Assembly: GCF_006345805.1 (NCBI RefSeq)
Contig: NW_021824951.1
Coordinates: forward strand, 1 to 17,146
DNA from: Octopus sinensis
Taxonomy: Eukaryota
Length of the DNA stretch: 17,146 nt
Direction of reading: 5' to 3'
Shown one piece after another: positions 1 through 17,146 of the stretch (positions within the stretch are counted from its first letter, which is position 1; each line of letters starts with the position of its first letter). Made by a program: the position numbers and the translations under genes. The notes below the pieces were generated by a model. The model did not search any database, was not told the origin of the DNA, and worked only from the letters and a program-made list of their open reading frames with translations.

Positions 1-247
1 ACACACCAGCATCGTTTGTCAAGCAATGCTAGGAGGACAAACACAGGCACACAAACACACACACGCATATATATATATATATACAACGGACTTCTTTCAA
101 TTTCCGTCTACCAAATCCACTCACAAGGCTTTGTTCGGCCCGAGGCTATAGTAGAAGACACTTGCCCAAGGTGCCACGCAGTGGGACTGAACCTGGAACC
201 GTGTAGCTGGTAAACAAGCTACTTACCACACAGCCACTCCTGCGCCT
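1..247 (-). mobile_element. tRNA-derived CORE-type SINE (family A, octopus OR-like); 3' part runs off the left edge of the window
   Basis: Minus strand reads GGCGCAGGAGTGGCTGTGTGGTAAG..., with A-box TGGCTGTGTGG (226-236), B-box GGTTCAGTCCC (183-193), CORE-like CCTTGGGCAAGTGTCTTCTACTATAGCCTCGG and an internal TA/TG microsatellite. Near-identical to 12900-13177. Confidence 0.88.
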
Positions 248-2610: not shown

Positions 2611-2663
2611 GCTTAACTCATTGACTTTGCAGATAACATCCACCTTAGTTTACCATTATTACT

Positions 2664-2896
2664 TATTTCTTTACTACACACAAGGGGCTAAACACAGAGG
2701 GGATAAACAAGGACAGACAAACGGAATTAGTCGATTACATCGACCCCAGTGCGTAACTGGTACTTAATTTATCAACCCCGAAAGGATGAAAGGCAAAGTC
2801 GACCTCGGCGGAATTTGAACCCAGAACGTAACGGCAGACGAAATACGGATATGTATTTTGCCCGGCGTGCTAACGTTTCTGCCAGCTCGCCGCCTT
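2664..2896 (-). mobile_element. tRNA-derived SINE, family B (Meta/MESC-like central domain), full length
   Basis: Minus strand GGCGGCGAGCTGGCAGAAACG...GGTTCAAATTCCGCC (B-box), then GAGGTCGACTTTGCCTTTCATCCTTTCGGGGTTGATAAATTAAGTACCAG and tail ...GTAAAGAAATA. Multiple homologous copies in the window. Superfamily name is from recall. Confidence 0.88.
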
Positions 2897-4282
2897 CATT
2901 TACCATTATTACTGACAAGCTGGTGACTACCTGGGAAGCCCTTTCACCTCATAAATTGACAGAGGCCGCCATTGTTCTGCTATTTGTGCATTACAAGATT
3001 GAGATAGAAGAAAAATATTCATTAAATATTTGAATAACGAATCAAGAATTCTTTAGAAGATAATAATACACCTGAAGCAGGTGCATTATGCCTTAATTAA
3101 AAATGTTTTAGCCCGAAGGCCGCGGCCATGCTGGGGCACTACCTTTTATTTCTTTTCTTTCAAAACTTGCCGGCGTGCTCGCCTTCTCAGCAATTCTAAC
3201 AGCAAAAGATTCATACTGGCTACATTTGTGCCAACATAACGCCCATAAATGTTCCTGAATGTATTACGTGGAGATTCCATCATCATAAGTTTGGCTATTC
3301 CAGGGCAATGACCGTCAATGCAACCCTTTTTTTCAACCCCATTATACACCTGGGAAATCAAGAGAATTCTTCACAATTAAATTATCTAACATCTTCCTGG
3401 ACGGTTTGGTTTCCTGTTTCACCATGTGTAACTTTTTCATCGATTAAATGGCAATTTCTAAATCACCATAACCAGCTGTCAATAGTTGCGAAAGTTTTTG
3501 TCGCCATAAATGCTGAGGTGGCTTAGCAGCCTTACTTTGAAATTCCGCGACGTACGTTGCTTCCACCGGATCGTTGATGGATAAACACATCGTCTCTACT
3601 TCCTCAAGATTTTGTATCTTTTGTAATTTTCACGCCCTTTCTTGTGCCAACAGGTGATGAATAAGAATTTGTGTAAGTATTCTATTTGGAGAGAAACATA
3701 GGTCTGTGCTTAGTCTTACATATATTCAAAATTGTTTGCCTTTTATTTTCACACACTGCAAAATCACTCGCCACCGAAAGAACAGCTTCTAACTTTAGGT
3801 TTCTGGTTAAGAGATAGGGTATTATATATTTCTTTTGATTATTGCTCTCCCTTGAAGACAGAATATGAAAGACAAGACTGGAAGACGCATTGTCATTTAT
3901 ATAGCATTGAAAATTATAGGACAACAGAGATTATGTTGTATTCCGTATGGTGCTTCTACTCATTGTGCCCTGGGCTGCCGTGTTAAGCTAGCATAAGTAA
4001 TATTCAAACTGCAAAAACAGAACTATTGTAAAGAAAATCAATTTCAGTAGATAAATTTTTATCGAATTAATAAAACTTTTACCACGAAAGTGTAATGTCT
4101 ATAATAGAGGAGTGTGATTGAAAATAAGATTGAGGAAGTCATATTTAACAAATTGAATATAGATGGAAAAAAAATAGGGAAAAGGAGTAAAGGAAATCGA
4201 ATAGAAGGCGACTTAGGGCATTGGTTAGGCGTGTATGCAGAATGCCATAAAGGAAGTAAAATTCTTTAGACAGAAGGATTTA

Positions 4283-4506
4283 GGCGGATAGAAACGTTAG
4301 CACGCCGGGCGAAATGCGTAGCCGTATTTCGTTCGCCGTTACGTTCTGAGTTCAAATTCCGCCGAGGTCGACTTTGCCTTTCATCCTTTCGGGGTCGATA
4401 AATAAAGTACCAGTTACGCACCGGGGTCGATGTAATCGACTTAATCCCTTTGTCTGTCCTTGTTTGTCCCCTCTATGTTTAGCCCTTTGTGGGCAGTAAA
4501 GAAATA
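4283..4506 (+). mobile_element. SINE family B, near full length (5' head degenerate)
   Basis: Colinear with 9828-10064; B-box GAGTTCAAATTCC; ends GTAAAGAAATA. Confidence 0.9.
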
Positions 4507-4513
4507 TATATAG

Positions 4514-4709
4514 TTCTTTTTTGCTCACAAGGGGCTAAACATAGAAAGAACAAACAAGGACAGGCAAAGGGATTAAGTCGATTACATCGACCTCAGTGCG
4601 TAACTGGTACTTATTTAATCGACTCCGAAAGGATGAAAGGCAAAGTCGACCTCGGCAGAATTTGAACTCAGAACGTAGCGGCAGACGAAATACCTGTTTT
4701 TTTACTGCC
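4514..4709 (-). mobile_element. SINE family B body lacking the A-box head, preceded by a remnant tail of another unit
   Basis: Reverse complement of the family B body from GGTATTTCGTCTGCCG (4694) to the tail. 4695-4709 reads GGCAGTAAAAAAACA on the minus strand, a degenerate tail (GGCAGTAAAGAAATA). Confidence 0.88.
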
Positions 4710-4710
4710 T

Positions 4711-4995
4711 CTTTTAGTCGAGCAAATCAACCCCAGCACTTATTCTTTGTAAGCTTAGTACGTATTATATCGGTCTCTTTTGCTGAATCGCTAAGTCACG
4801 GAGACGTAAACACACCAGCATCCGTTGTCAAGCGATGGTGCGGTAACAAACACAGACTCACAAACATACACACACCCATGTATATATACGTATAAATACA
4901 CATGTATATATATACGACAAGCTTCTCCCAGTTTCCGTCTACCAAATCCACTCACAAGGCTTTGGTCCGCTCGAGGCTATAGTAGAGGACACTTG
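4711..4995 (-). mobile_element. CORE-type SINE family A, fragment truncated at both ends
   Basis: Colinear with about 12835-13100, including the internal microsatellite. Confidence 0.85.
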
Positions 4996-5898: not shown

Positions 5899-5942
5899 AC
5901 CGTCGTCATCATCATCGTCATCATCATCGTCATCATCATCAT

Positions 5943-5989
<47 letters not shown>

Positions 5990-6150
5990 ACAACAACAAC
6001 AACAACAACAACATTGTAATAACAACTAGACTGTTAGAAGAACAAAAAGAACATTATTACAAGTGTGTGAACACCCAGAAAAAAAAAAATCAATTTCAAC
6101 AGCAGCAGCAACAGCAGCAGTAGTAGTAGCAACAGCAGCAGTAGTAGCAG
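5899..6150. repeat. (CAT)n-(CAA)n and (CAG/TAG)n trinucleotide tracts
   Basis: CAT/CAA run at about 5899-6012; CAG/TAG run at about 6098-6150. Confidence 0.92.
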
Positions 6151-6583
6151 TTTAATTGCAGTTGAAACAACAACAAAACATTACCATAAAAACAGAAAAA
6201 TAATCAACTTCAAGTCAGCGAGGGAGGGTTTTACGTGGTTGCTTTGACTGCTAGAAATAACAACCGAATCTCTCCTAATTTGATTGACTTGGAGAAAGAA
6301 AGGTCGCAATAAAGAATGCAGTTCTACGGAGTAGAATAAAGAGGGAATTATCATTGGTAGAGATTCTTTTCATTATTATTATTATTATTATTATCTTAGG
6401 GGGCTGGCTTTGAAGCCGTATACAGAACTGACATGGGCTAAGCAACAACAGAAAGTTTAAACAAAACCCTTGTATTATCATTATATAGGTTTCCTGGTAA
6501 CGGAGCAGGAGAGGAAACCGTCGGTGTTATCCACCCCAGTCTATGACTGGTACCTTATCGACAGAGGAAGGATGATGGCAAAA

Positions 6584-6651
6584 ACTACTACTACTACTAC
6601 TACCACCACCACCACCACCACCACCACCACCACCACCACTACTACTACCAC
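6584..6651. repeat. (CTA)n-(CCA)n-(CTA)n trinucleotide tract
   Basis: Direct inspection. Confidence 0.93.
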
Positions 6652-6667
6652 AATAACCCTTTGCATT

Positions 6668-6777
6668 ATAGGCACAAGGGCTGAAATTTTGGGGGAGGGG
6701 GATAGTCGATTACGTCGATCCCCAGTACTAAATTGGTACTTATTTAATCATATCCTCCTCCACCCCGAAAGGATGAA
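6668..6777 (-). mobile_element. SINE family B variant with a different 3' tail, 5'-truncated
   Basis: Shares TTCATCCTTTCGGGG...TAAGTACCAA...GGGGATCGACGTAATCGAC, but continues CCCCCTCCCCCAAAATTTCAGCCCTTGTGCCTAT instead of the family B tail. Confidence 0.7.
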
Positions 6778-7118
6778 CGGCGTTTTCTGCTCATTTCTGG
6801 GTGACATTGCACACGCTGCGCGTCATCTCGTCCCAGTTCTTCTCCATTTGGAGGTCTGGACTAAACCAGGCCGCTAGCAATTTAAACAGCCCGTCCTTCC
6901 AGCGCCACATAACGCTGTCGAGCAATATGGACCTGTCTTTCCAGTCGAGCTGCAGGCTTACAATCATTTCTTGGTTGCTATTTGCTGTCCATTAGAACGT
7001 TGCAGATCACCTCGGTGTACCTGATACCGGATACTATGACGATGACGTCATCGACTAGCAGGACTTGATATTCTCCCAATTGCCAAGAGGTACCCAGTCA
7101 AGCCTGACATTTAAAAGT
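6778..7118 (-). mobile_element. Decayed L1/Tx1-clade LINE ORF2, RT catalytic region and downstream (3' piece)
   Basis: Minus-strand translation gives VLLVDDVIVIVS (VDDV at 7044-7055, equivalent to the YADD RT motif). After a frameshift it gives LQLDWKD...WRWKDGLFKLLAAWFSPDLQMEKNWDE (6827-6868), matching the Tx1-type 'W.DGP.K.LG.WFGPDL..EKNW' pattern. Contains stops and frameshifts. Confidence 0.78.
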
Positions 7119-7246
7119 TGTTGTGTGGGCGCCCCTAGACGATGAAGTAGGCTAGCCCAATACGTATATATAGATGGAGAAGTCTAGACGTCGAGAGAGA
7201 AGTAGAGTTAAGTTGAGTTGAGATCATCCGAACGTGCGACATTACA
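7119..7246 (+). repeat. TRIM 5' LTR (128 bp)
   Basis: 108/118 aligned identities to the 3' LTR plus a 10-bp tandem-type indel. Termini TGTTGTG/CATTACA; TATA-like TATATATAG inside. Confidence 0.92.
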
Positions 7247-7247
7247 G

Positions 7248-7295
7248 TGGCGACGAGATGAGATTCGAACTCACGCAGGAATAACCCAATGGATT
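7248..7295 (+). other. Primer-binding site, extended antisense copy of mature tRNA-Ser 3' half (CCA to about A37)
   Basis: Reverse complement is AA TCCAT TGGGTTATTCCTGC GTGAG TTCGAAT CTCAT CTCGTC G CCA: anticodon 3' stem, long variable arm, T-arm, acceptor strand, discriminator G and CCA. The acceptor strand matches tRNA-Ser(GCU) (…CCTCGTCG) minus one C. Confidence 0.85.
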
Positions 7296-7466
7296 TATGG
7301 TATGATTTGTTCCAGGTCCCAGAACCACAAGCAAAAGCAGAACCGCCACATAGGTCGAACAGGAAGAGAAAACCTACAGAAATGATGGAAATTTACGCTA
7401 AGAGAAAAAGATATGTCAGTTTCTCACCGAGGAAATAAAATTGATAAATTCGGGTTTAAAAAACTC

Positions 7467-7478
7467 AAAAAAGGGAAG
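7467..7478 (+). other. Polypurine tract (PPT) of the TRIM
   Basis: AAAAAAGGGAAG immediately 5' of the LTR2 TGT. Confidence 0.88.
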
Positions 7479-7596
7479 TGTTGTGTGGACGCCCCCAGAC
7501 GATGAAGTAGGCTAGCCCAATACGTAGATATAGAGGGAGAGGTCTAGACATCGAGAGTGAAGTTGAGTAGAGGTCATCCGAACGTGCGACATAACA
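7479..7596 (+). repeat. TRIM 3' LTR (118 bp)
   Basis: Direct repeat of 7119-7246; ends CATAACA followed by the TSD AAAGT. Confidence 0.92.
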
Positions 7597-8230
7597 AAAG
7601 TAAAGTTCACAGAGCAGGTCATCCAAACCAGGTGATTTATTCGCCTTGTGTTCGGTTTTTCGCAACGCAGCAGGCCATCGAGGTAAGCCCTGAAATCCAT
7701 CCTGCGTTCCGGCCTGCCATTCTTCTTGAACAGTCAAGCAAAATGCTGCTGAAAAGCCGCATATATTTACTTGGGGCTGAGTAACGTGGCCCGTTGTGGT
7801 CAATCGAAACCGTGTTGTGGCTTTGTTGCCATGTCGTATGTCTGCAACTCGGACACATCGACCAGCTTTCGTCCTCACTTTTCAATCACACACCTTAGCT
7901 CTGACATTGAAGAATTGGTCGAAAGCGAATCTCACCGTGGACGCGTCTGTTGCGATGCCTTTCATAAGTGACTCTTCTAAGGTTTCAACACAATTTCCTT
8001 CTATTCTTGCTAAACTTTACTAAAGCCTTTCCCCGAACTCTTCGTTGTTGGTGACTGCTCTGTAACCGCCTGCCTAACTGATTCACCAATCCGCTTTCGT
8101 TAAGCTTGGCACACCGGCGATAAAGCATTTAGTTTCCAGTAAGCGGGTCCCTGACAACGAAGCATATATAAGTCAACCGTAAAGATCGCAAATATGTGGT
8201 CCATGCAGCCGAATACCATACATTGTTGAC
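7597..8230 (-). mobile_element. Decayed L1/Tx1-clade LINE ORF2, end of AP endonuclease to pre-RT region (5' piece)
   Basis: Minus strand: MDH (8196-8204, like the SDH end of the APE domain), GPAYWKLN (8127-8150, the G.G.WKLN motif), DFRAYLDGL and KSPGLDDLLCELYF (7597-7638, the KSPG.DGL..E.Y motif). Multiple frameshifts and stops. Left-right order is consistent with ORF2. Confidence 0.82.
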
Positions 8231-9420: not shown

Positions 9421-9827
9421 TTAGAAAACTACGAAATAACAAGAGTTAGATGCCTCAAGCAGAATTTCTTTTTGTTAATGACTTTCTCAAAACGTCATAA
9501 TTATTTCATTTGCATTCTTAATTGATAAAACGTCTCGGCAGCTTCGAGCACAAAATATGCTTGTCGCTGTAGTGTACGTCACAGAAGGACAACTTTTCGT
9601 TTTTACGAGCTACAGTTTGTTCATCACACGCTGCTCATTGTCGCACGGGATTCTAGGATGCCGATGTTTCGACGTGTTGGGACTCTTCAGCCTGAACCAA
9701 ACTATTAGATTTGCTTATACCTTCAGCGGACAAATTGTTTGCTGATCGCTGCTTGTATCTGTCAACCGACAAATTATCGTTATTTGCACCAACGTCTATA
9801 GCAAGACCAGAATATATATATGTGGAA

Positions 9828-10432
9828 GGCGGCGAGCTGACAGAAACGTTAGCACACCGGGCGAAATGCTTAGCGGTATTTCGTCTGCCGTTACGTTCTG
9901 AGTTCAAATTCCGCGCAGGTCGACTTTGCCTTTCTTCCTTTCGGGGTCGATAAATTAAGTACCAGTTACGCACTGGAGTCGATATAATCGACTTAATTCG
10001 TTTGTCTGTTTTTGTTTGTCCTCTCTATGTTTAGCTCCTTGTGGGTACTAAAGAAATAGAAATAGGTATTTCGTCTGCCGTTACGTACTTAGTTCAAATT
10101 CCGCCGAGGTCGACTTTGCCTTTCATCTTTTCGGGGTCGATTAAATAAGTACCAGTCACGCACTGGGGTCGATGTAATCGACTTAATCCCTTTGCCTGTC
10201 CTTGTTTGTCCCCTCTGCGTTTAGCCCCTTGTGGGTAGTAAAGAAATAGATATTTCGTCTGCCGTTACGTTCTGAGTTCAAATTCCGCCGAGGTCGAATT
10301 TTCCTTTCATTTTTTCGGGGTCTATTAAATAAGTACCAATTAATCACTGGGGTCGATGTAATCGACTTAATCCGTTTGTCTGTCCTTGTTTGTCCCCTCA
10401 GTGTGTAGCCCTTTGTGGGCAATAGAGAAATA
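9828..10432 (+). mobile_element. SINE family B head-to-tail trimer: full unit 9828-10064 plus headless units 10065-10248 and 10249-10432 (184 bp each)
   Basis: Three colinear bodies, each with the B-box (GAGTTCAAATTCC or a close variant). Only unit 1 has the GGCGGCGAGCTG head. Units 2 and 3 start at the same internal site, G(G/A)TATTTCGTCTGCCG. Confidence 0.92.
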
Positions 10433-10618
10433 AATATATGTATGTGGTGTGTGTGAGTGTGTGTAAGAAATAAATGAAGTTGATAATGCTGAGAGAGTAT
10501 ATATGAAGAATTATCAAAATTAATACACTTAAGCGATTTCCAATTTGCCTGATTTTCAAAAGAGTTTCTCACAAGAAACGTGCAACACAGCCGCACGTCT
10601 CTCAAAAATAAAACTTAT

Positions 10619-12369: not shown

Positions 12370-12750
12370 ACGCTTGGCCGCATGGATAAGGAGTTCACTT
12401 TGAAACCACGTGGTTTTGGGTGTGGCCCCAATGCGCATCTCTTTTGTGCAAGCGTCTTCTATAACCCCAAACCAACAAGGGCCTTGTGAGTGAATTTCAT
12501 TGAGATAAACTGTGCGGAAGGCGTCGTATACGAATATGTCGCTGAGTGTATATGGCTGTGTGTCTCTATGTCTGTGTTTGTTCTCCTCTCACAGCAGGTT
12601 TGTTTACAGCTCCGTAATTTAGCGGAGTGATAGAATAAGTACCAGGCTTTAAAAAAAATACCAAAAAACTAAGGTCGATTTGTTCGACTAAAACCCTTCA
12701 AAGCGGTATCCCAACGTGGTCGTAGTCCAATGACTGAAACAAGTAAAAGA
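12370..12750 (+). mobile_element. Old, diverged full-length CORE-type SINE family A
   Basis: Degenerate head TGGCCGCATGGATAAG; core GCAAGCGTCTTCTATAACCCC...GCCTTGTGAGTG; tail GGTCGATTTGTTCGACTAAAACCCTTC...CAATGACTGAAACAAGTAAAAGA. Confidence 0.72.
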
Positions 12751-12765
12751 AGATTTAAGCATGCA

Positions 12766-13177
12766 TTTACTCATTCTTATTTACTCATTTGCTTGTTTCA
12801 GTCATTTGACTGCGGCCATGCTGGAGCACCGCCTTTAGTCGAGCAACTCGACCCCGGGACTTATTCTATTTAAGCCCAGTACTTATTCTATCGGTCTCTT
12901 TTGCCGAACCGCGAAGTGACGGGGACATAAACACACCAGCATCGGTTGTCAAGCAATGCTAGGGGGAAAAACACAGACACACAAACCAACACGCACACAT
13001 ACATATATATACATATATACGACGGGCTTCTTTCAGTTTCCGTCTACCAAATCCACTCACAAGGCTTTGGTCGGCCCGAGGCTATAGTAGAAGACACTTG
13101 CCCAAGGTGCCACGCAGTGGGACTGAACCCGGAACCATGTGGTTGGTAAGCAAGCTACTTACCACACAGCCACTCCT
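12766..13177 (-). mobile_element. CORE-type SINE family A, near full length, well preserved
   Basis: Head AGGAGTGGCTGTGTGGTAAG (13177), B-box GGTTCAGTCCC, CORE segment, internal microsatellite and tail CAGCATGGCCGCAGTCAAATGACTGAAACAAG. Confidence 0.9.
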
Positions 13178-13440: not shown

Positions 13441-14052
13441 AGTTCTTCCCAACCTCATGGTTACAGATTCAGTCCCACTGTATGGCACTTCGGCAAATGT
13501 CTTCTACTATAGCCCCAGGCTGATCAAAGCCTTGTGACTGGCTATGGACGCCGGAAACTTAAAGACGCCCGTCGAGGTCGACTAAATTCCGTCGAGGTCG
13601 ACTAAAAACCGCCGAGGTCGACTTTGTCTTTCATCCTTTCGGGGTCGATAAATAAAGTACCAGTTATGCACTGGGGTCGATGTAATCGACTTAATACCTA
13701 TGTCTGTCCTTGTTTGTCCCCTCTATGTTTAGCCCCTTGTGGGTAGTAAAAAGAAATACGCATATGTGTATGTGTGTTTGTGTGTGTGTGTGTGGTGTGC
13801 GTGGTGTGTGTGTTGTGTGTGTATGTGTGTGTGTCTTTGTGTCTGTGTTTGTCCCTCCACCACTGCTTGACAACCGGTGCTGGTGAATTTACGTTCACGT
13901 AACTTAGCAGTTCGGCAAAAGACATCGATAGAATAAGTAACAGAATTTAAAAAGTAAGTACTGGGATCGATTCTTTCTAACAAAACAAATTGTTTAAGAC
14001 GGTGCCCCAGCATGGCCGCAGTCTAATGACTGAAACAAGTAAAAAAAAAAAT
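13441..14052 (+). mobile_element. CORE-type SINE family A interrupted by a nested family B SINE
   Basis: 5' part about 13441-13574 (GATTCAGTCCCACTG...AAGACGCCCGTCG); 3' part 13759-14052 (TG repeat ... CAGCATGGCCGCAGTCTAATGACTGAAACAAGTAAAA). Confidence 0.82.
13575..13758 (+). mobile_element. 5'-truncated SINE family B nested in the family A copy
   Basis: Starts in a triplicated 20-mer (13569-13623), continues CTTTCATCCTTTCGGGGTCGATAAA and ends GTAAAAAGAAATA. Confidence 0.87.
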
Positions 14053-14667: not shown

Positions 14668-14770
14668 GGCACTATGTCGGTATTCACAGAATCGAAATTG
14701 AACGAAGTTTTATTTTGGGGATTCAGTCTAAATAGCGTTAACTAGTCGAATATAGAAGCAGCTCTTATAA

Positions 14771-15206
14771 TACATACATACATTCATACATACATACCTA
14801 CACCCACATACATACATATACATACATACATATACATACATACATACACACGTACATACATACATACACACACACATACACACATACATACACATACATA
14901 CATACACACACACACATACATACATACATACATACATGCATACATACATACATACATACATACATACATACATACATACATACATGCATACATACATACA
15001 TACATACATACATACATACATACATACATACACACACACATACACACATACATGCATACATACATACATATACACACACATACACACACATACATACATA
15101 CATACACACATACATACATACATACACACATACATACACATACACACACACATACATACATACATACATACATACATACATACATAGATACACACATACA
15201 TACATA
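14771..15206. repeat. (TACA)n tetranucleotide array with CA variants
   Basis: Direct inspection. Confidence 0.97.
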
Positions 15207-15413: not shown

Positions 15414-15825
15414 CATGTATGTATGTATGTATGTATGTATGTGTATGTATGTATGTATGTATGTATGTATGTGTGTGTGTATGTATGTATGTATGTATGT
15501 ATGTATGTATGTATTATGTATGTATGTACGTGTGTATGTATGCATGCATGTATGTCTGTATGTATTTGTGTATGTATGTATGTATCTATGTATTACGTGT
15601 GTATGTATGCATGTATGTATGTATGTATTTGTGTATGTACGTGTGTATGTATGCATGCATGTATGTATTTGTGTATGTACGTGTATATGTATGCATGCAT
15701 GTATGTATGTATGTATTTGTGTATGTATGTATGTATGTATGTACGTGTGTATGTATGCATGCATGTATGTATTTGTGTATGTACGTGTATATGTATGCAT
15801 GCATGTATGTATGTATGTATTTGTG

Positions 15826-15859
<34 letters not shown>

Positions 15860-16162
15860 TGTATGTATGTGTGTGTGTATGTATGTATGTATGTATGTAT
15901 GTGTACATATGGGCAGATATACGTATGTATGGTAGATATATGCACGTTTGTATGTATATACATGTCTATCAATGTTCGTAAATACATAAGTATGCATGAA
16001 CGTACATACGTATATAAGCATGTATGTATGTGTGTACGTATATACGTATGTATGTACGTATATACGTACATATATATGCATGTATGTAGGTATGTACGTA
16101 TGTATATATGCATGTATGTACGTATGTATATATGTTTGTATGTATGTACTTACGTACGTACG
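15414..16162. repeat. (TATG/TGTA)n tetranucleotide array with higher-order substructure
   Basis: Direct inspection; reverse-complement orientation relative to 14771-15206. Confidence 0.97.
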
Positions 16163-16411: not shown

Positions 16412-16607
16412 TAATATCTATATATATATATATATATATATATTTAAGTAGTTGAATGAATTATCTTATTAAGGATAATTCGAAAGATAACCGATACCTG
16501 GGTAGCAAATTCACATCAGAAAGAACACGGTTGAAGCTACGTCCCTAGGGCATAGACACGTGCTTCGTGCGGAAAGGAAATTTGTATGTTTATTTTAAAA
16601 TTATAAG

Positions 16608-16811
16608 TATATGAAAGAATGGAGTTGAACGACTAGTTAACAAATATCCTTTATTCTCGACATATGTTTCGAAGTCTGCATATTCCTAATTCCGAAGGAA
16701 TAAGGAGTACATATTGCAGATTTCTCGGAATTAGGAATATGCAGCCTTCGAAACATACGTCGAGAATAAAGGATATTTGTTAACTAGTCGTTCAACTCAT
16801 TCTTTCATATA
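16608..16811. mobile_element. 204-bp foldback / palindromic MITE-like element
   Basis: Arms 16608-16695 (88 nt) and 16725-16811 (87 nt) are reverse complements with 2 mismatches and one 1-nt indel. 29-nt spacer; TA at the ends. Confidence 0.75.
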
Positions 16812-17146
16812 TATATATATTATATATTGTATACCAAAATCAAGCAGTTTTATTTCTTTATTCTGTATTTATGTAGGCATATATATTATAATTATATAAT
16901 ATATATATTATATATATATATATATATAGATGGAGATATGTATGTAGGCAATTATGTCTGTATGTTAAAAATTATGTGTGTATACATTATACGTTCATGT
17001 ATGCATGTACCTATGTGTGTATGCCTCAAGTATTTTCTGTATATATAGGTGAGTGGATAGGAAGGGAGAGAAATACGTATGTTTGATTTATGCACGCATG
17101 TATATACACATCCATGCATATATGCATACATGAATGTATATTTGTA
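16803..17146. repeat. TA/TG-rich low-complexity sequence
   Basis: Direct inspection. Confidence 0.7.

What the first reader, a model, noticed from the sequence alone, without database searches (positions are those of the whole stretch)
7114..7601. Structurally complete 478-bp TRIM in an apparently cephalopod genome
Seen in sequence: two short direct repeats (128 and 118 bp, 108/118 identical) with TGT...ACA ends, a PBS 1 nt after LTR1, a 12-nt PPT abutting LTR2, a perfect 5-bp TSD (AAAGT) and only 232 bp inside. Established: this is the TRIM architecture. TRIMs are best known from plants, with scattered animal reports, and are easily missed by LTR finders with minimum-length filters. Inference: short LTRs, a 5-bp TSD and a tRNA-Ser PBS suggest a Ty3/Gypsy (possibly Mag-like) autonomous partner. 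I am not aware of a described octopus TRIM family but cannot check. About 8% LTR-LTR divergence means this copy is not recent.
Basis: partly seen in the sequence, partly recalled or inferred. Interest (0 to 1): 0.82.

Follow-up and report, generated by a model that had tools for sequence, protein, structure and literature searches.

The report
Miniature LTR retrotransposon, long tRNA-Ser footprint
A 478-base miniature retrotransposon copy (two short terminal repeats, a tRNA primer site, a purine tract and a 5-base target duplication) really is there and is ordinary in kind; I could not check whether it belongs to a multi-copy family, and its one odd trait is a primer site that copies about 48 bases of a serine tRNA instead of the usual 18.

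Summary
There are two direct repeats (7119-7246 and 7479-7596) with 108/118 identities and one 10-nt indel. They have TG..CA ends. A PBS starts 1 nt after LTR1, and a 12-nt PPT abuts LTR2. The 5-bp duplication AAAGT is perfect, and 232 nt lie inside. This is an integrase-made insertion of a non-coding LTR retroelement with TRIM dimensions.

The decisive question is whether this is a multi-copy TRIM family or a one-off mini-derivative of a full-length element. It could not be tested. None of the reachable collections holds cephalopod non-coding DNA, and all DNA and protein searches came back empty.

The Gypsy/Mag partner is not supported by anything testable here. A 5-bp duplication and a tRNA-Ser PBS are not diagnostic.

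One new point emerged. The tRNA complement runs 48-49 nt (7248-7296), from CCA through the T arm and variable arm to the anticodon loop. It looks like a fossil of plus-strand read-through into the primer.

The LTRs carry CCAAT and TATA motifs and no tRNA or 5S module, so the element is not Helenus, Ajax or Cassandra. LTR divergence is K=0.09, roughly 12 My.

Animal TRIMs are already known, so at best this is a new member of a known kind.

The parts
7114..7118 (+). Left copy of the 5-bp target-site duplication, AAAGT
   Evidence: Read directly. Identical to 7597-7601.
7119..7246 (+). 5' LTR, 128 nt, TG..CA ends
   Evidence: Direct-repeat families D2 and D3. Global alignment gives 108/118 identities plus a 10-nt indel. 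blastn E=4.5e-36.
7157..7173 (+). CCAAT (7157-7161) and TATATATAG (7165-7173) inside the 5' LTR: a putative RNA polymerase II promoter. The 3' LTR has CCAAT at 7517-7521 and a mutated TAGATATAG at 7525-7533.
   Evidence: Motif positions. Promoter function is inferred, not tested. No tRNA or 5S match in the LTRs.
7248..7265 (+). Canonical 18-nt primer-binding site, complementary to the 3' end (CCA, G73, acceptor strand, start of the T arm) of tRNA-Ser. It has a 1-nt deletion relative to the tRNA after the first 11-12 nt.
7266..7296 (+). Extension of the tRNA-Ser complement beyond the usual stop. It covers the rest of the T loop, the 5' strand of the T stem, a variable-arm hairpin (GGG/TTAT/TCC in tRNA sense) and the 3' strand of the anticodon stem (TCCAT), and ends at about tRNA position 36-37.
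   Evidence: Alignment score 46 against shuffles 13.2 +/- 2.4. 26 of 28 aligned columns (T arm, acceptor, CCA; window 7248-7274) match the tRNA-Ser(GCT) of L003. The Rfam model RF04351, whose consensus reads as the antisense of a plastid trnS, aligns to 7251-7297 on the + strand with E=0.05-0.07.
7297..7466 (+). Remaining internal domain, about 170 nt, non-coding and of unknown origin (presumed leader of the parent element). Contains AATAAA at 7434-7439.
   Evidence: No protein similarity in any of the six frames. No repeat elsewhere in the window. RNA fold not better than shuffles, z=-0.03.
7467..7478 (+). Polypurine tract AAAAAAGGGAAG, abutting the 3' LTR
7479..7596 (+). 3' LTR, 118 nt
7597..7601 (+). 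Right copy of the target-site duplication, AAAGT

Best explanation
This is an old, inactive copy of a non-autonomous LTR retrotransposon of TRIM architecture.

Inferred life cycle: an RNA started downstream of the CCAAT/TATA motifs in the 5' LTR. It was packaged by the proteins of an unidentified autonomous LTR element and reverse-transcribed from a tRNA-Ser primer annealed at 7248 onward. Plus-strand synthesis was primed at the purine tract 7467-7478. That element's integrase inserted the product and duplicated AAAGT.

The 48-49-nt tRNA complement includes the post-transcriptionally added CCA, so it was copied from a mature tRNA and not from a tRNA gene. It most likely records a cycle, in this copy or an ancestor, in which plus-strand strong-stop synthesis ran past the usual stop at position 58 and on to the anticodon loop. 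The extra sequence was then fixed next to the PBS.

Shown: the anatomy, the tRNA-Ser identity, the length of the complement, the absence of coding capacity, and the LTR divergence (K=0.09). Inferred: the promoter, trans-mobilisation, the read-through origin, family status, and an age of about 12 My.
For: Anatomy and target duplication.

Repeat significance.

tRNA-Ser complement: with weak support.

No protein similarity in six frames against 5.8 billion proteins.

No tRNA or 5S module in the LTRs.

The dimensions fit the TRIM definition quoted in PMC10886601: under 1000 bp, two LTRs, PBS and PPT at the ends of the internal region, no proteins.

In a documented case, a TRIM's internal part equals the 5' 198 bp plus the 3' 12 bp of an autonomous element's internal region (PMC10886601). 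That is the layout seen here: PBS, about 170 nt, then PPT.

m1A58 acts as the plus-strand strong-stop signal, and without a stop synthesis continues further into the tRNA (PMC8599865).

A random genomic deletion that keeps both the PBS and the PPT while removing several kb is a narrow target. This favours a replicative origin (my inference).
Against: Only one copy has been seen. There is no second copy, solo LTR or partner in the window or in any collection searched.

Those collections evidently lack cephalopod non-coding DNA. Even the window's abundant SINE found a single 543-nt contig. Absence is therefore uninformative in both directions.

The PBS has a 1-nt deletion after 11-12 nt. No canonical poly(A) signal lies in the LTR. 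The leader shows no significant RNA structure.

[quoted passage not shown] Fixation of the extension must therefore have been a rare event.
Confidence: 0.58

Rival explanations
1. This is a one-off mini-derivative of a full-length LTR retrotransposon. It arose in one of two ways. Either a single aberrant reverse-transcription product was integrated directly: plus-strand strong-stop DNA read into the tRNA primer as far as the anticodon loop, then switched template to the region just upstream of the PPT. Or a normal insertion later lost its interior by genomic deletion. In both cases it never formed a family.
For: Only one copy is known.

The long tRNA read-through is exactly what an aberrant reverse-transcription event would leave, and PMC8599865 describes such read-through as normally a dead end.

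The 170-nt remainder has no significant structure that would suggest a conserved packaging signal.
Against: The terminal repeats are short (118-128 nt) and the size falls in the classic TRIM range.

A post-insertion deletion sparing both PBS and PPT within 232 nt is a narrow target.

No gag or pol remnant is detectable, although 170 nt is too short to make that decisive.
Confidence: 0.33
2. The tRNA-like stretch is not a primer footprint. It is an antisense fragment of a tRNA-derived SINE or tRNA retro-pseudogene that happened to insert next to the LTR.
For: The window is full of tRNA-derived SINEs.
Against: The stretch is in exact register with a PBS: the CCA complement starts 1 nt after the LTR end, and it has no flanks or target duplication of its own.

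It has no similarity to the window's SINE families.

It ends inside the anticodon loop and lacks the box A half of the tRNA.
Confidence: 0.03
3. It is a TRIMp3-type element (Helenus, Ajax or Cassandra), transcribed by RNA polymerase III from a small-RNA module in its LTRs.
For: Helenus occurs in molluscs (bivalves), and some bivalve Helenus families use a tRNA-Ser primer (PMC10886601).
Against: ARAGORN finds no tRNA. Rfam finds no tRNA or 5S match in the LTRs even at E<=1. The LTR instead carries CCAAT and TATA motifs. The tRNA-like part here is antisense and internal, not in the LTR.
Confidence: 0.02
4. It is a chance or segmental tandem duplication with no retroelement origin.
For: None beyond the presence of two direct repeats.
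Against: TG..CA ends, a PBS in register, a PPT abutting the second repeat and a perfect 5-bp flanking duplication all coincide.
Confidence: 0.01

Closest known systems
TRIMs (terminal-repeat retrotransposons in miniature) as defined in plants and later found in ants, taeniid cestodes and bivalves (summarised in PMC10886601)
   Same: Total length under 1 kb, terminal direct repeats of about 100-250 nt, PBS and PPT at the two ends of a short non-coding interior, a 5-bp target duplication, and presumed trans-mobilisation.
   Different: Family status is unproven here, since only one copy was seen. The tRNA complement is 48-49 nt instead of about 8-18. The source is probably a cephalopod, for which I found no published TRIM.
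biv-TRIM of bivalve molluscs (Satovic et al. 2019, PMC6934838)
   Same: A molluscan host and a miniature LTR architecture with a PPT.
   Different: biv-TRIM has repeats of 202-218 bp, a 77-80 bp interior, a 7-bp PPT (GGGGAGA) and no identifiable canonical PBS. The present element has 118-128 nt repeats, a 232-nt interior, a 12-nt PPT and an unusually long canonical PBS.
Helenus, Ajax and Cassandra (TRIMp3; Kojima 2024, PMC10886601)
   Same: Non-autonomous miniature LTR elements. Helenus is present in molluscs, and some of its families are primed by tRNA-Ser.
   Different: Those elements carry a sense tRNA-like or 5S-like pol III promoter module inside the LTRs. Here the LTRs carry CCAAT and TATA motifs and no small-RNA module. 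The tRNA-derived stretch is antisense, internal and contiguous with the PBS. Animal Helenus makes 4-bp duplications; this element made 5 bp.
Complementarity to the primer tRNA beyond the 18-nt PBS in retroviruses and Ty1
   Same: PMC8599865 reports retroviral genome-tRNA-Lys complementarity continuing to just before position 54. Ty1 is described as having an 'extended PBS' (abstract of PMC3681743). The concept of primer contacts beyond 18 nt is therefore known.
   Different: In retroviruses the extension is about 4 nt, reaching just before position 54; from my memory, Ty1's extra contacts are discontinuous boxes. Here it is one contiguous antisense copy of about 48 nt that reaches the anticodon loop.

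Membership tests
TRIM (non-autonomous miniature LTR retrotransposon) | Two terminal direct repeats of roughly 100-250 nt, with the whole element under 1000 bp | tested here: met
   128 and 118 nt, 478 nt in total.
TRIM (non-autonomous miniature LTR retrotransposon) | PBS complementary to a tRNA 3' end just downstream of the 5' repeat | tested here: met
   TGG starts 1 nt after LTR1. The match to tRNA-Ser is shown.
TRIM (non-autonomous miniature LTR retrotransposon) | Polypurine tract just upstream of the 3' repeat | tested here: met
   AAAAAAGGGAAG at 7467-7478.
TRIM (non-autonomous miniature LTR retrotransposon) | Target-site duplication flanking the element | tested here: met
   AAAGT on both sides.
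TRIM (non-autonomous miniature LTR retrotransposon) | No coding capacity for gag, pol or other mobilisation proteins | tested here: met
   Six-frame translations found nothing at E<=0.1 among 5.8 billion proteins. The longest start-to-stop ORFs lying within the element are 49-55 aa.
TRIM (non-autonomous miniature LTR retrotransposon) | Multiple dispersed copies of similar size with different target duplications, and often solo repeats or tandem arrays | not testable with these tools
   There is no other copy in the window. The DNA and protein collections lack cephalopod non-coding DNA.
TRIM (non-autonomous miniature LTR retrotransposon) | An autonomous partner sharing LTR ends, PBS or leader | not testable with these tools
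   Exact-match scans with five patterns from the LTR, the LTR/PBS junction, the PBS and the leader found no related retroelement.
Helenus (TRIMp3 with a tRNA-derived LTR module) | A sense tRNA-like sequence with box A and box B inside each LTR | tested here: not met
   ARAGORN found 0 genes. There is no tRNA match in Rfam at E<=1. The LTR has CCAAT and TATA motifs instead.
Ajax / Cassandra (5S-derived LTR module) | A 5S rRNA-derived promoter segment in the LTRs | tested here: not met
   No 5S match in Rfam at E<=1.
biv-TRIM | Repeats of 202-218 bp, an interior of 77-80 bp, PPT GGGGAGA, and the conserved TGATCCCAAAGGAC core | tested here: not met
   The dimensions and PPT differ. The conserved core motif does not appear in the internal sequence printed.
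Ty3/Gypsy (Mag lineage) dependent element | Sequence similarity of LTR, PBS or leader to a Mag-lineage autonomous element | not testable with these tools
   No partner was found. A 5-bp duplication and a tRNA-Ser PBS are not specific.

The most novel reading that the evidence does not exclude
The 48-49-nt contiguous antisense copy of tRNA-Ser (from CCA to the anticodon loop) may be a heritable feature of a cephalopod LTR-element lineage rather than an accident of this copy.

In that lineage, plus-strand strong-stop synthesis would routinely pass position 58 of the tRNA-Ser primer and halt only at the heavily modified anticodon loop. The matching long PBS in the genomic RNA would keep such products competent for strand transfer.

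A related reading is that the mini-element was born in one step from such a read-through product followed by a template switch. That would be a concrete mechanism for how TRIMs originate.
Probability: 0.2. Interest if true: 0.55.

Novelty: new member of a known kind. Interest (0 to 1): 0.3.

Why it matters
If a family exists, it would extend TRIMs to cephalopods. Their large, repeat-rich genomes are annotated with LTR finders that tend to miss elements this small. That would be a modest gain for annotation.

The more interesting point is mechanistic. A PBS that continues as one uninterrupted tRNA copy to the anticodon loop is a natural record of how far a retrotransposon reverse transcriptase read into its primer. 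Across many copies, and in the autonomous partner, it could show whether the position-58 stop operates for tRNA-Ser in this host, and how miniature elements arise.

As a single copy it has no evident effect on the host. It sits in non-coding, SINE-rich and microsatellite-rich DNA.

Tried and rejected
1. Protein-level hunt for other copies. The -0 frame and the other five frames of the element were searched against 5.8 billion proteins. Nothing was found. Exact look-up of ten window ORFs showed that none is in the collection.

2. DNA pattern scans.
- The LTR core 21-mer was absent from the metagenome collection and the viral collection.
- In the prokaryote genome collection it gave one hit. That hit is a 25-nt chance match inside a bacterial coding region (L001) and was rejected.
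- The LTR-end/PBS junction pattern found nothing.
- Two leader 20/21-mers found nothing.
- The gapped PBS pattern (extending into the T arm) hit only a phage tRNA-Ser gene (L003). This served as a tRNA reference but is not a retroelement.

3. Test of whether the databases contain the host at all. A profile of the window's abundant SINE peptide found a single protein on a 543-nt ENA metagenome contig. The negatives above therefore say nothing about copy number.

4. Target context. Pfam on the flank frames found nothing credible. An exhaustive HMMER search of the 93-aa flank ORF gave only two repeat-inflated spurious hits. The insertion site is non-coding and unique within the window.

5. Rfam tRNA model on the truncated antisense stretch gave no tRNA call. 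Only the plastid antisense-trnS model hit, at E about 0.05.

6. RNA folding of the leader and of the tRNA-sense stretch was not better than shuffles.

7. Literature searches using sequence strings returned only unrelated papers or none.

8. A 12/14 similarity between the LTR (GGTCATCCGAAC) and the right flank at 7617-7628 was judged probably chance.
Full report
**Observation**

The region was read directly and analysed for repeats and by global alignment. Two direct repeats lie at 7119-7246 (128 nt) and 7479-7596 (118 nt). They share 108 of 118 aligned positions and differ by one 10-nt indel in an AG/T-rich stretch. Both begin TGTTG and end ACA.

AAAGT lies immediately outside on both sides (7114-7118 and 7597-7601). 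The interior is 232 nt (7247-7478). It begins, after one spacer base, with TGGCGACGAG, and ends with AAAAAAGGGAAG abutting the second repeat.

Within the window the repeat pair gives blastn E=4.5e-36. Nothing else in the 17 kb resembles either the repeats or the interior, apart from microsatellite noise. The co-occurrence of TG..CA ends, an in-register PBS, a PPT and a perfect target duplication excludes chance or a simple tandem duplication.

The complement of the tRNA does not stop after the usual 18 nt. In tRNA sense, 7296-7248 contains, in order:
- the last bases of an anticodon loop;
- the 3' strand of the anticodon stem (TCCAT);
- a short hairpin in the place of a long variable arm (GGG/TTAT/TCC);
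- a T arm (GTGAG / TTCGAAT / CTCA);
- the acceptor 3' strand, G73 and CCA.

Its score is 46, against 13.2 +/- 2.4 for 500 shuffles. tRNA-Leu matches only the T arm, and tRNA-Lys does not match.

There is also a reference that does not depend on memory. A scan for the PBS pattern (extending into the T arm) found a phage-encoded gene that ARAGORN calls tRNA-Ser(GCT). Its T arm, acceptor strand and CCA agree with the window at 26 of 28 columns, with one gap and one mismatch.

Rfam's model RF04351 has a consensus that is visibly the antisense of a tRNA-Ser 3' part. It aligns to 7251-7297 on the plus strand at E=0.05-0.07.

The 5' strand of the anticodon stem, the D arm and box A are absent. Relative to the tRNA there is a 1-nt deletion at the junction of T stem and acceptor, so the uninterrupted PBS is 11-12 nt in this decayed copy.

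**What the LTRs contain**

Each LTR carries CCAAT. Eight bases on from where CCAAT starts, LTR1 has a TATA motif (TATATATAG); LTR2 has a mutated version (TAGATATAG). ARAGORN finds no tRNA in the window. Rfam at E<=1 reports no tRNA or 5S match in the LTRs. The element is therefore not a Helenus, Ajax or Cassandra type, which are defined by a sense small-RNA promoter module in the LTRs (PMC10886601). No canonical poly(A) signal lies in the LTR. The only AATAAA is internal, at 7434-7439.

**Coding capacity and context**

All six reading frames of the element were searched against 5.8 billion proteins, with no hit at E<=0.1. The flanks have no credible Pfam match. The 93-aa open stretch to the right of the element gives only two repeat-inflated spurious hits in an exhaustive search of 1.84 billion representatives.

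The surrounding window has no credible gene. It is dense in microsatellites, in two SINE families and in two foldback elements. The insertion sits in unique non-coding DNA, next to a SINE fragment at 6699-6781.

**Is it a family?**

- The LTR core, the LTR/PBS junction and two leader words are absent from the metagenome and viral collections.
- The one hit in the prokaryote genome collection is a 25-nt chance match inside a bacterial gene.
- As a control, I searched a profile of the peptide encoded by the window's most abundant SINE. It found one protein, on a 543-nt ENA metagenome contig that carries both of the window's SINE families.

The reachable collections therefore hold essentially none of this host's non-coding DNA. 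The negative results carry no weight about copy number.

**Mechanism**

The anatomy is what tRNA-primed reverse transcription and integrase-mediated insertion produce (summarised in PMC10886601).
- Shown: LTRs, PBS, PPT, target duplication, lack of coding capacity.
- Inferred: pol II transcription from the CCAAT/TATA region, packaging and reverse transcription by proteins of an autonomous element, and integration.

The long tRNA complement includes CCA, which eukaryotic tRNA genes do not encode (established knowledge). It is in exact register with the PBS. It was therefore copied from a mature primer tRNA, not captured from a gene or a SINE.

Plus-strand strong-stop DNA normally ends one base before m1A58. 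Without a stop, synthesis continues further into the tRNA, and the product no longer matches the other strand after transfer (PMC8599865). The footprint here ends in the anticodon loop, where tRNA-Ser carries bulky modifications at positions 37 and 32 (established knowledge; not tested for this host).

My reading is that a read-through product was, rarely, fixed next to the PBS. Once present in the RNA genome, such an extension would make later read-through products complementary again, so it could persist. Whether this happened in a family ancestor, in the autonomous parent, or only in the event that made this copy is unknown.

**Rival**

The main rival (about one third) is a one-off: either an aberrant reverse-transcription product (read-through followed by a template switch to just upstream of the PPT) integrated directly, or a later genomic deletion of a full-length insertion.

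I favour the family reading slightly, for three reasons. The repeats and total size are squarely in the TRIM range. A deletion that spares both PBS and PPT within 232 nt is a narrow target. Documented TRIM interiors are precisely the 5' leader plus the 3' PPT of an autonomous element. Against it, only one copy has been seen.

**Partner**

In Kojima's survey the Gypsy-dependent animal Helenus families make 4-bp duplications and the Copia-dependent ones 5-bp. tRNA-Ser primers occur in bivalve Helenus families. Gypsy (including the Mag lineage and CsRN1), Copia (GalEa, Hydra) and BEL/Pao elements are all reported from cephalopods (PMC6238403).

**Age**

The ten substitutions (5 transitions, 5 transversions) give JC K=0.090. 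The calibration implied by the 2026 O. vulgaris repeat paper is JC 0.09 = 25 My from consensus, or about 0.0036 per site per My. LTR-LTR divergence of 0.09 then corresponds to about 12 My, if the host is an octopus and gene conversion is ignored.

**Host**

I recognise the SINE at 1-241 from memory as the common octopus SINE. No tool result confirms the taxon.

**Comparison and novelty**

TRIMs are known in plants, ants, taeniid cestodes and bivalves, and Helenus TRIMs in six animal phyla. biv-TRIM differs in every dimension and lacks a canonical PBS.

No paper in the searchable library combines the TRIM term with 'cephalopod'. Recent octopus repeat annotations list no TRIM class. Repbase and Dfam could not be consulted.

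At best this is a new member of a known kind. The contiguous 48-nt primer footprint is the only unusual trait. I found no description of one in two literature searches, which is weak evidence of novelty.

**Verdict**

Interest is 0.3.

Noticed in passing
window 2660-2897, 4284-4709, 9825-10451, 13609-13758, 6699-6781: A SINE family is present as single copies, as an inverted pair forming a 370-nt palindrome (89.7% identity) and as a head-to-tail array of three units (period 184-190). The inverted pair produces sub-threshold, spurious matches to plant miRNA families in Rfam.
   Followed up: partly
window 1-241, 4713-4995, 12931-13177, 13445-13574: A second SINE family ending in a (TA)n/(TG)n tail. 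I recognise it from memory as the common octopus SINE, and this is the only basis for the cephalopod attribution. Both SINE families also occur together on one 543-nt ENA metagenome contig (L002, ERZ23499442).
   Followed up: partly
window 16602-16817 and 12629-12892: Two foldback, MITE-like palindromes. The first has 74-nt arms that are 97% complementary with 29 nt between them. The second is an older 264-nt palindrome.
   Followed up: no
window 7617-7628 versus 7572-7583 (and 7222-7233): The right flank, 20 nt beyond the element, contains GGTCATCCAAAC, a 12/14 match to the LTR's GAGGTCATCCGAAC. My rough corrected probability is about 0.04, so it is probably chance.
   Followed up: partly
window 7165-7173 versus 7525-7533: The TATA motif is intact in the 5' LTR (TATATATAG) but altered in the 3' LTR (TAGATATAG). 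Which state is ancestral cannot be told from one copy.
   Followed up: no
L003 4096-4189 (IMGVR_UViG_3300032038_000305): A phage contig with seven tRNA genes. Its tRNA-Ser(GCT) has a T arm, acceptor strand and CCA nearly identical to the animal-type tRNA-Ser footprint in the window (26 of 28 columns).
   Followed up: partly
window 14770-15206 and 15415-16148; also 5900-6150 and 6575-6660: Very long (ATAC)n and (ATGT)n tetranucleotide arrays and several trinucleotide arrays. These generate most of the long 'ORFs' in the window.
   Followed up: no
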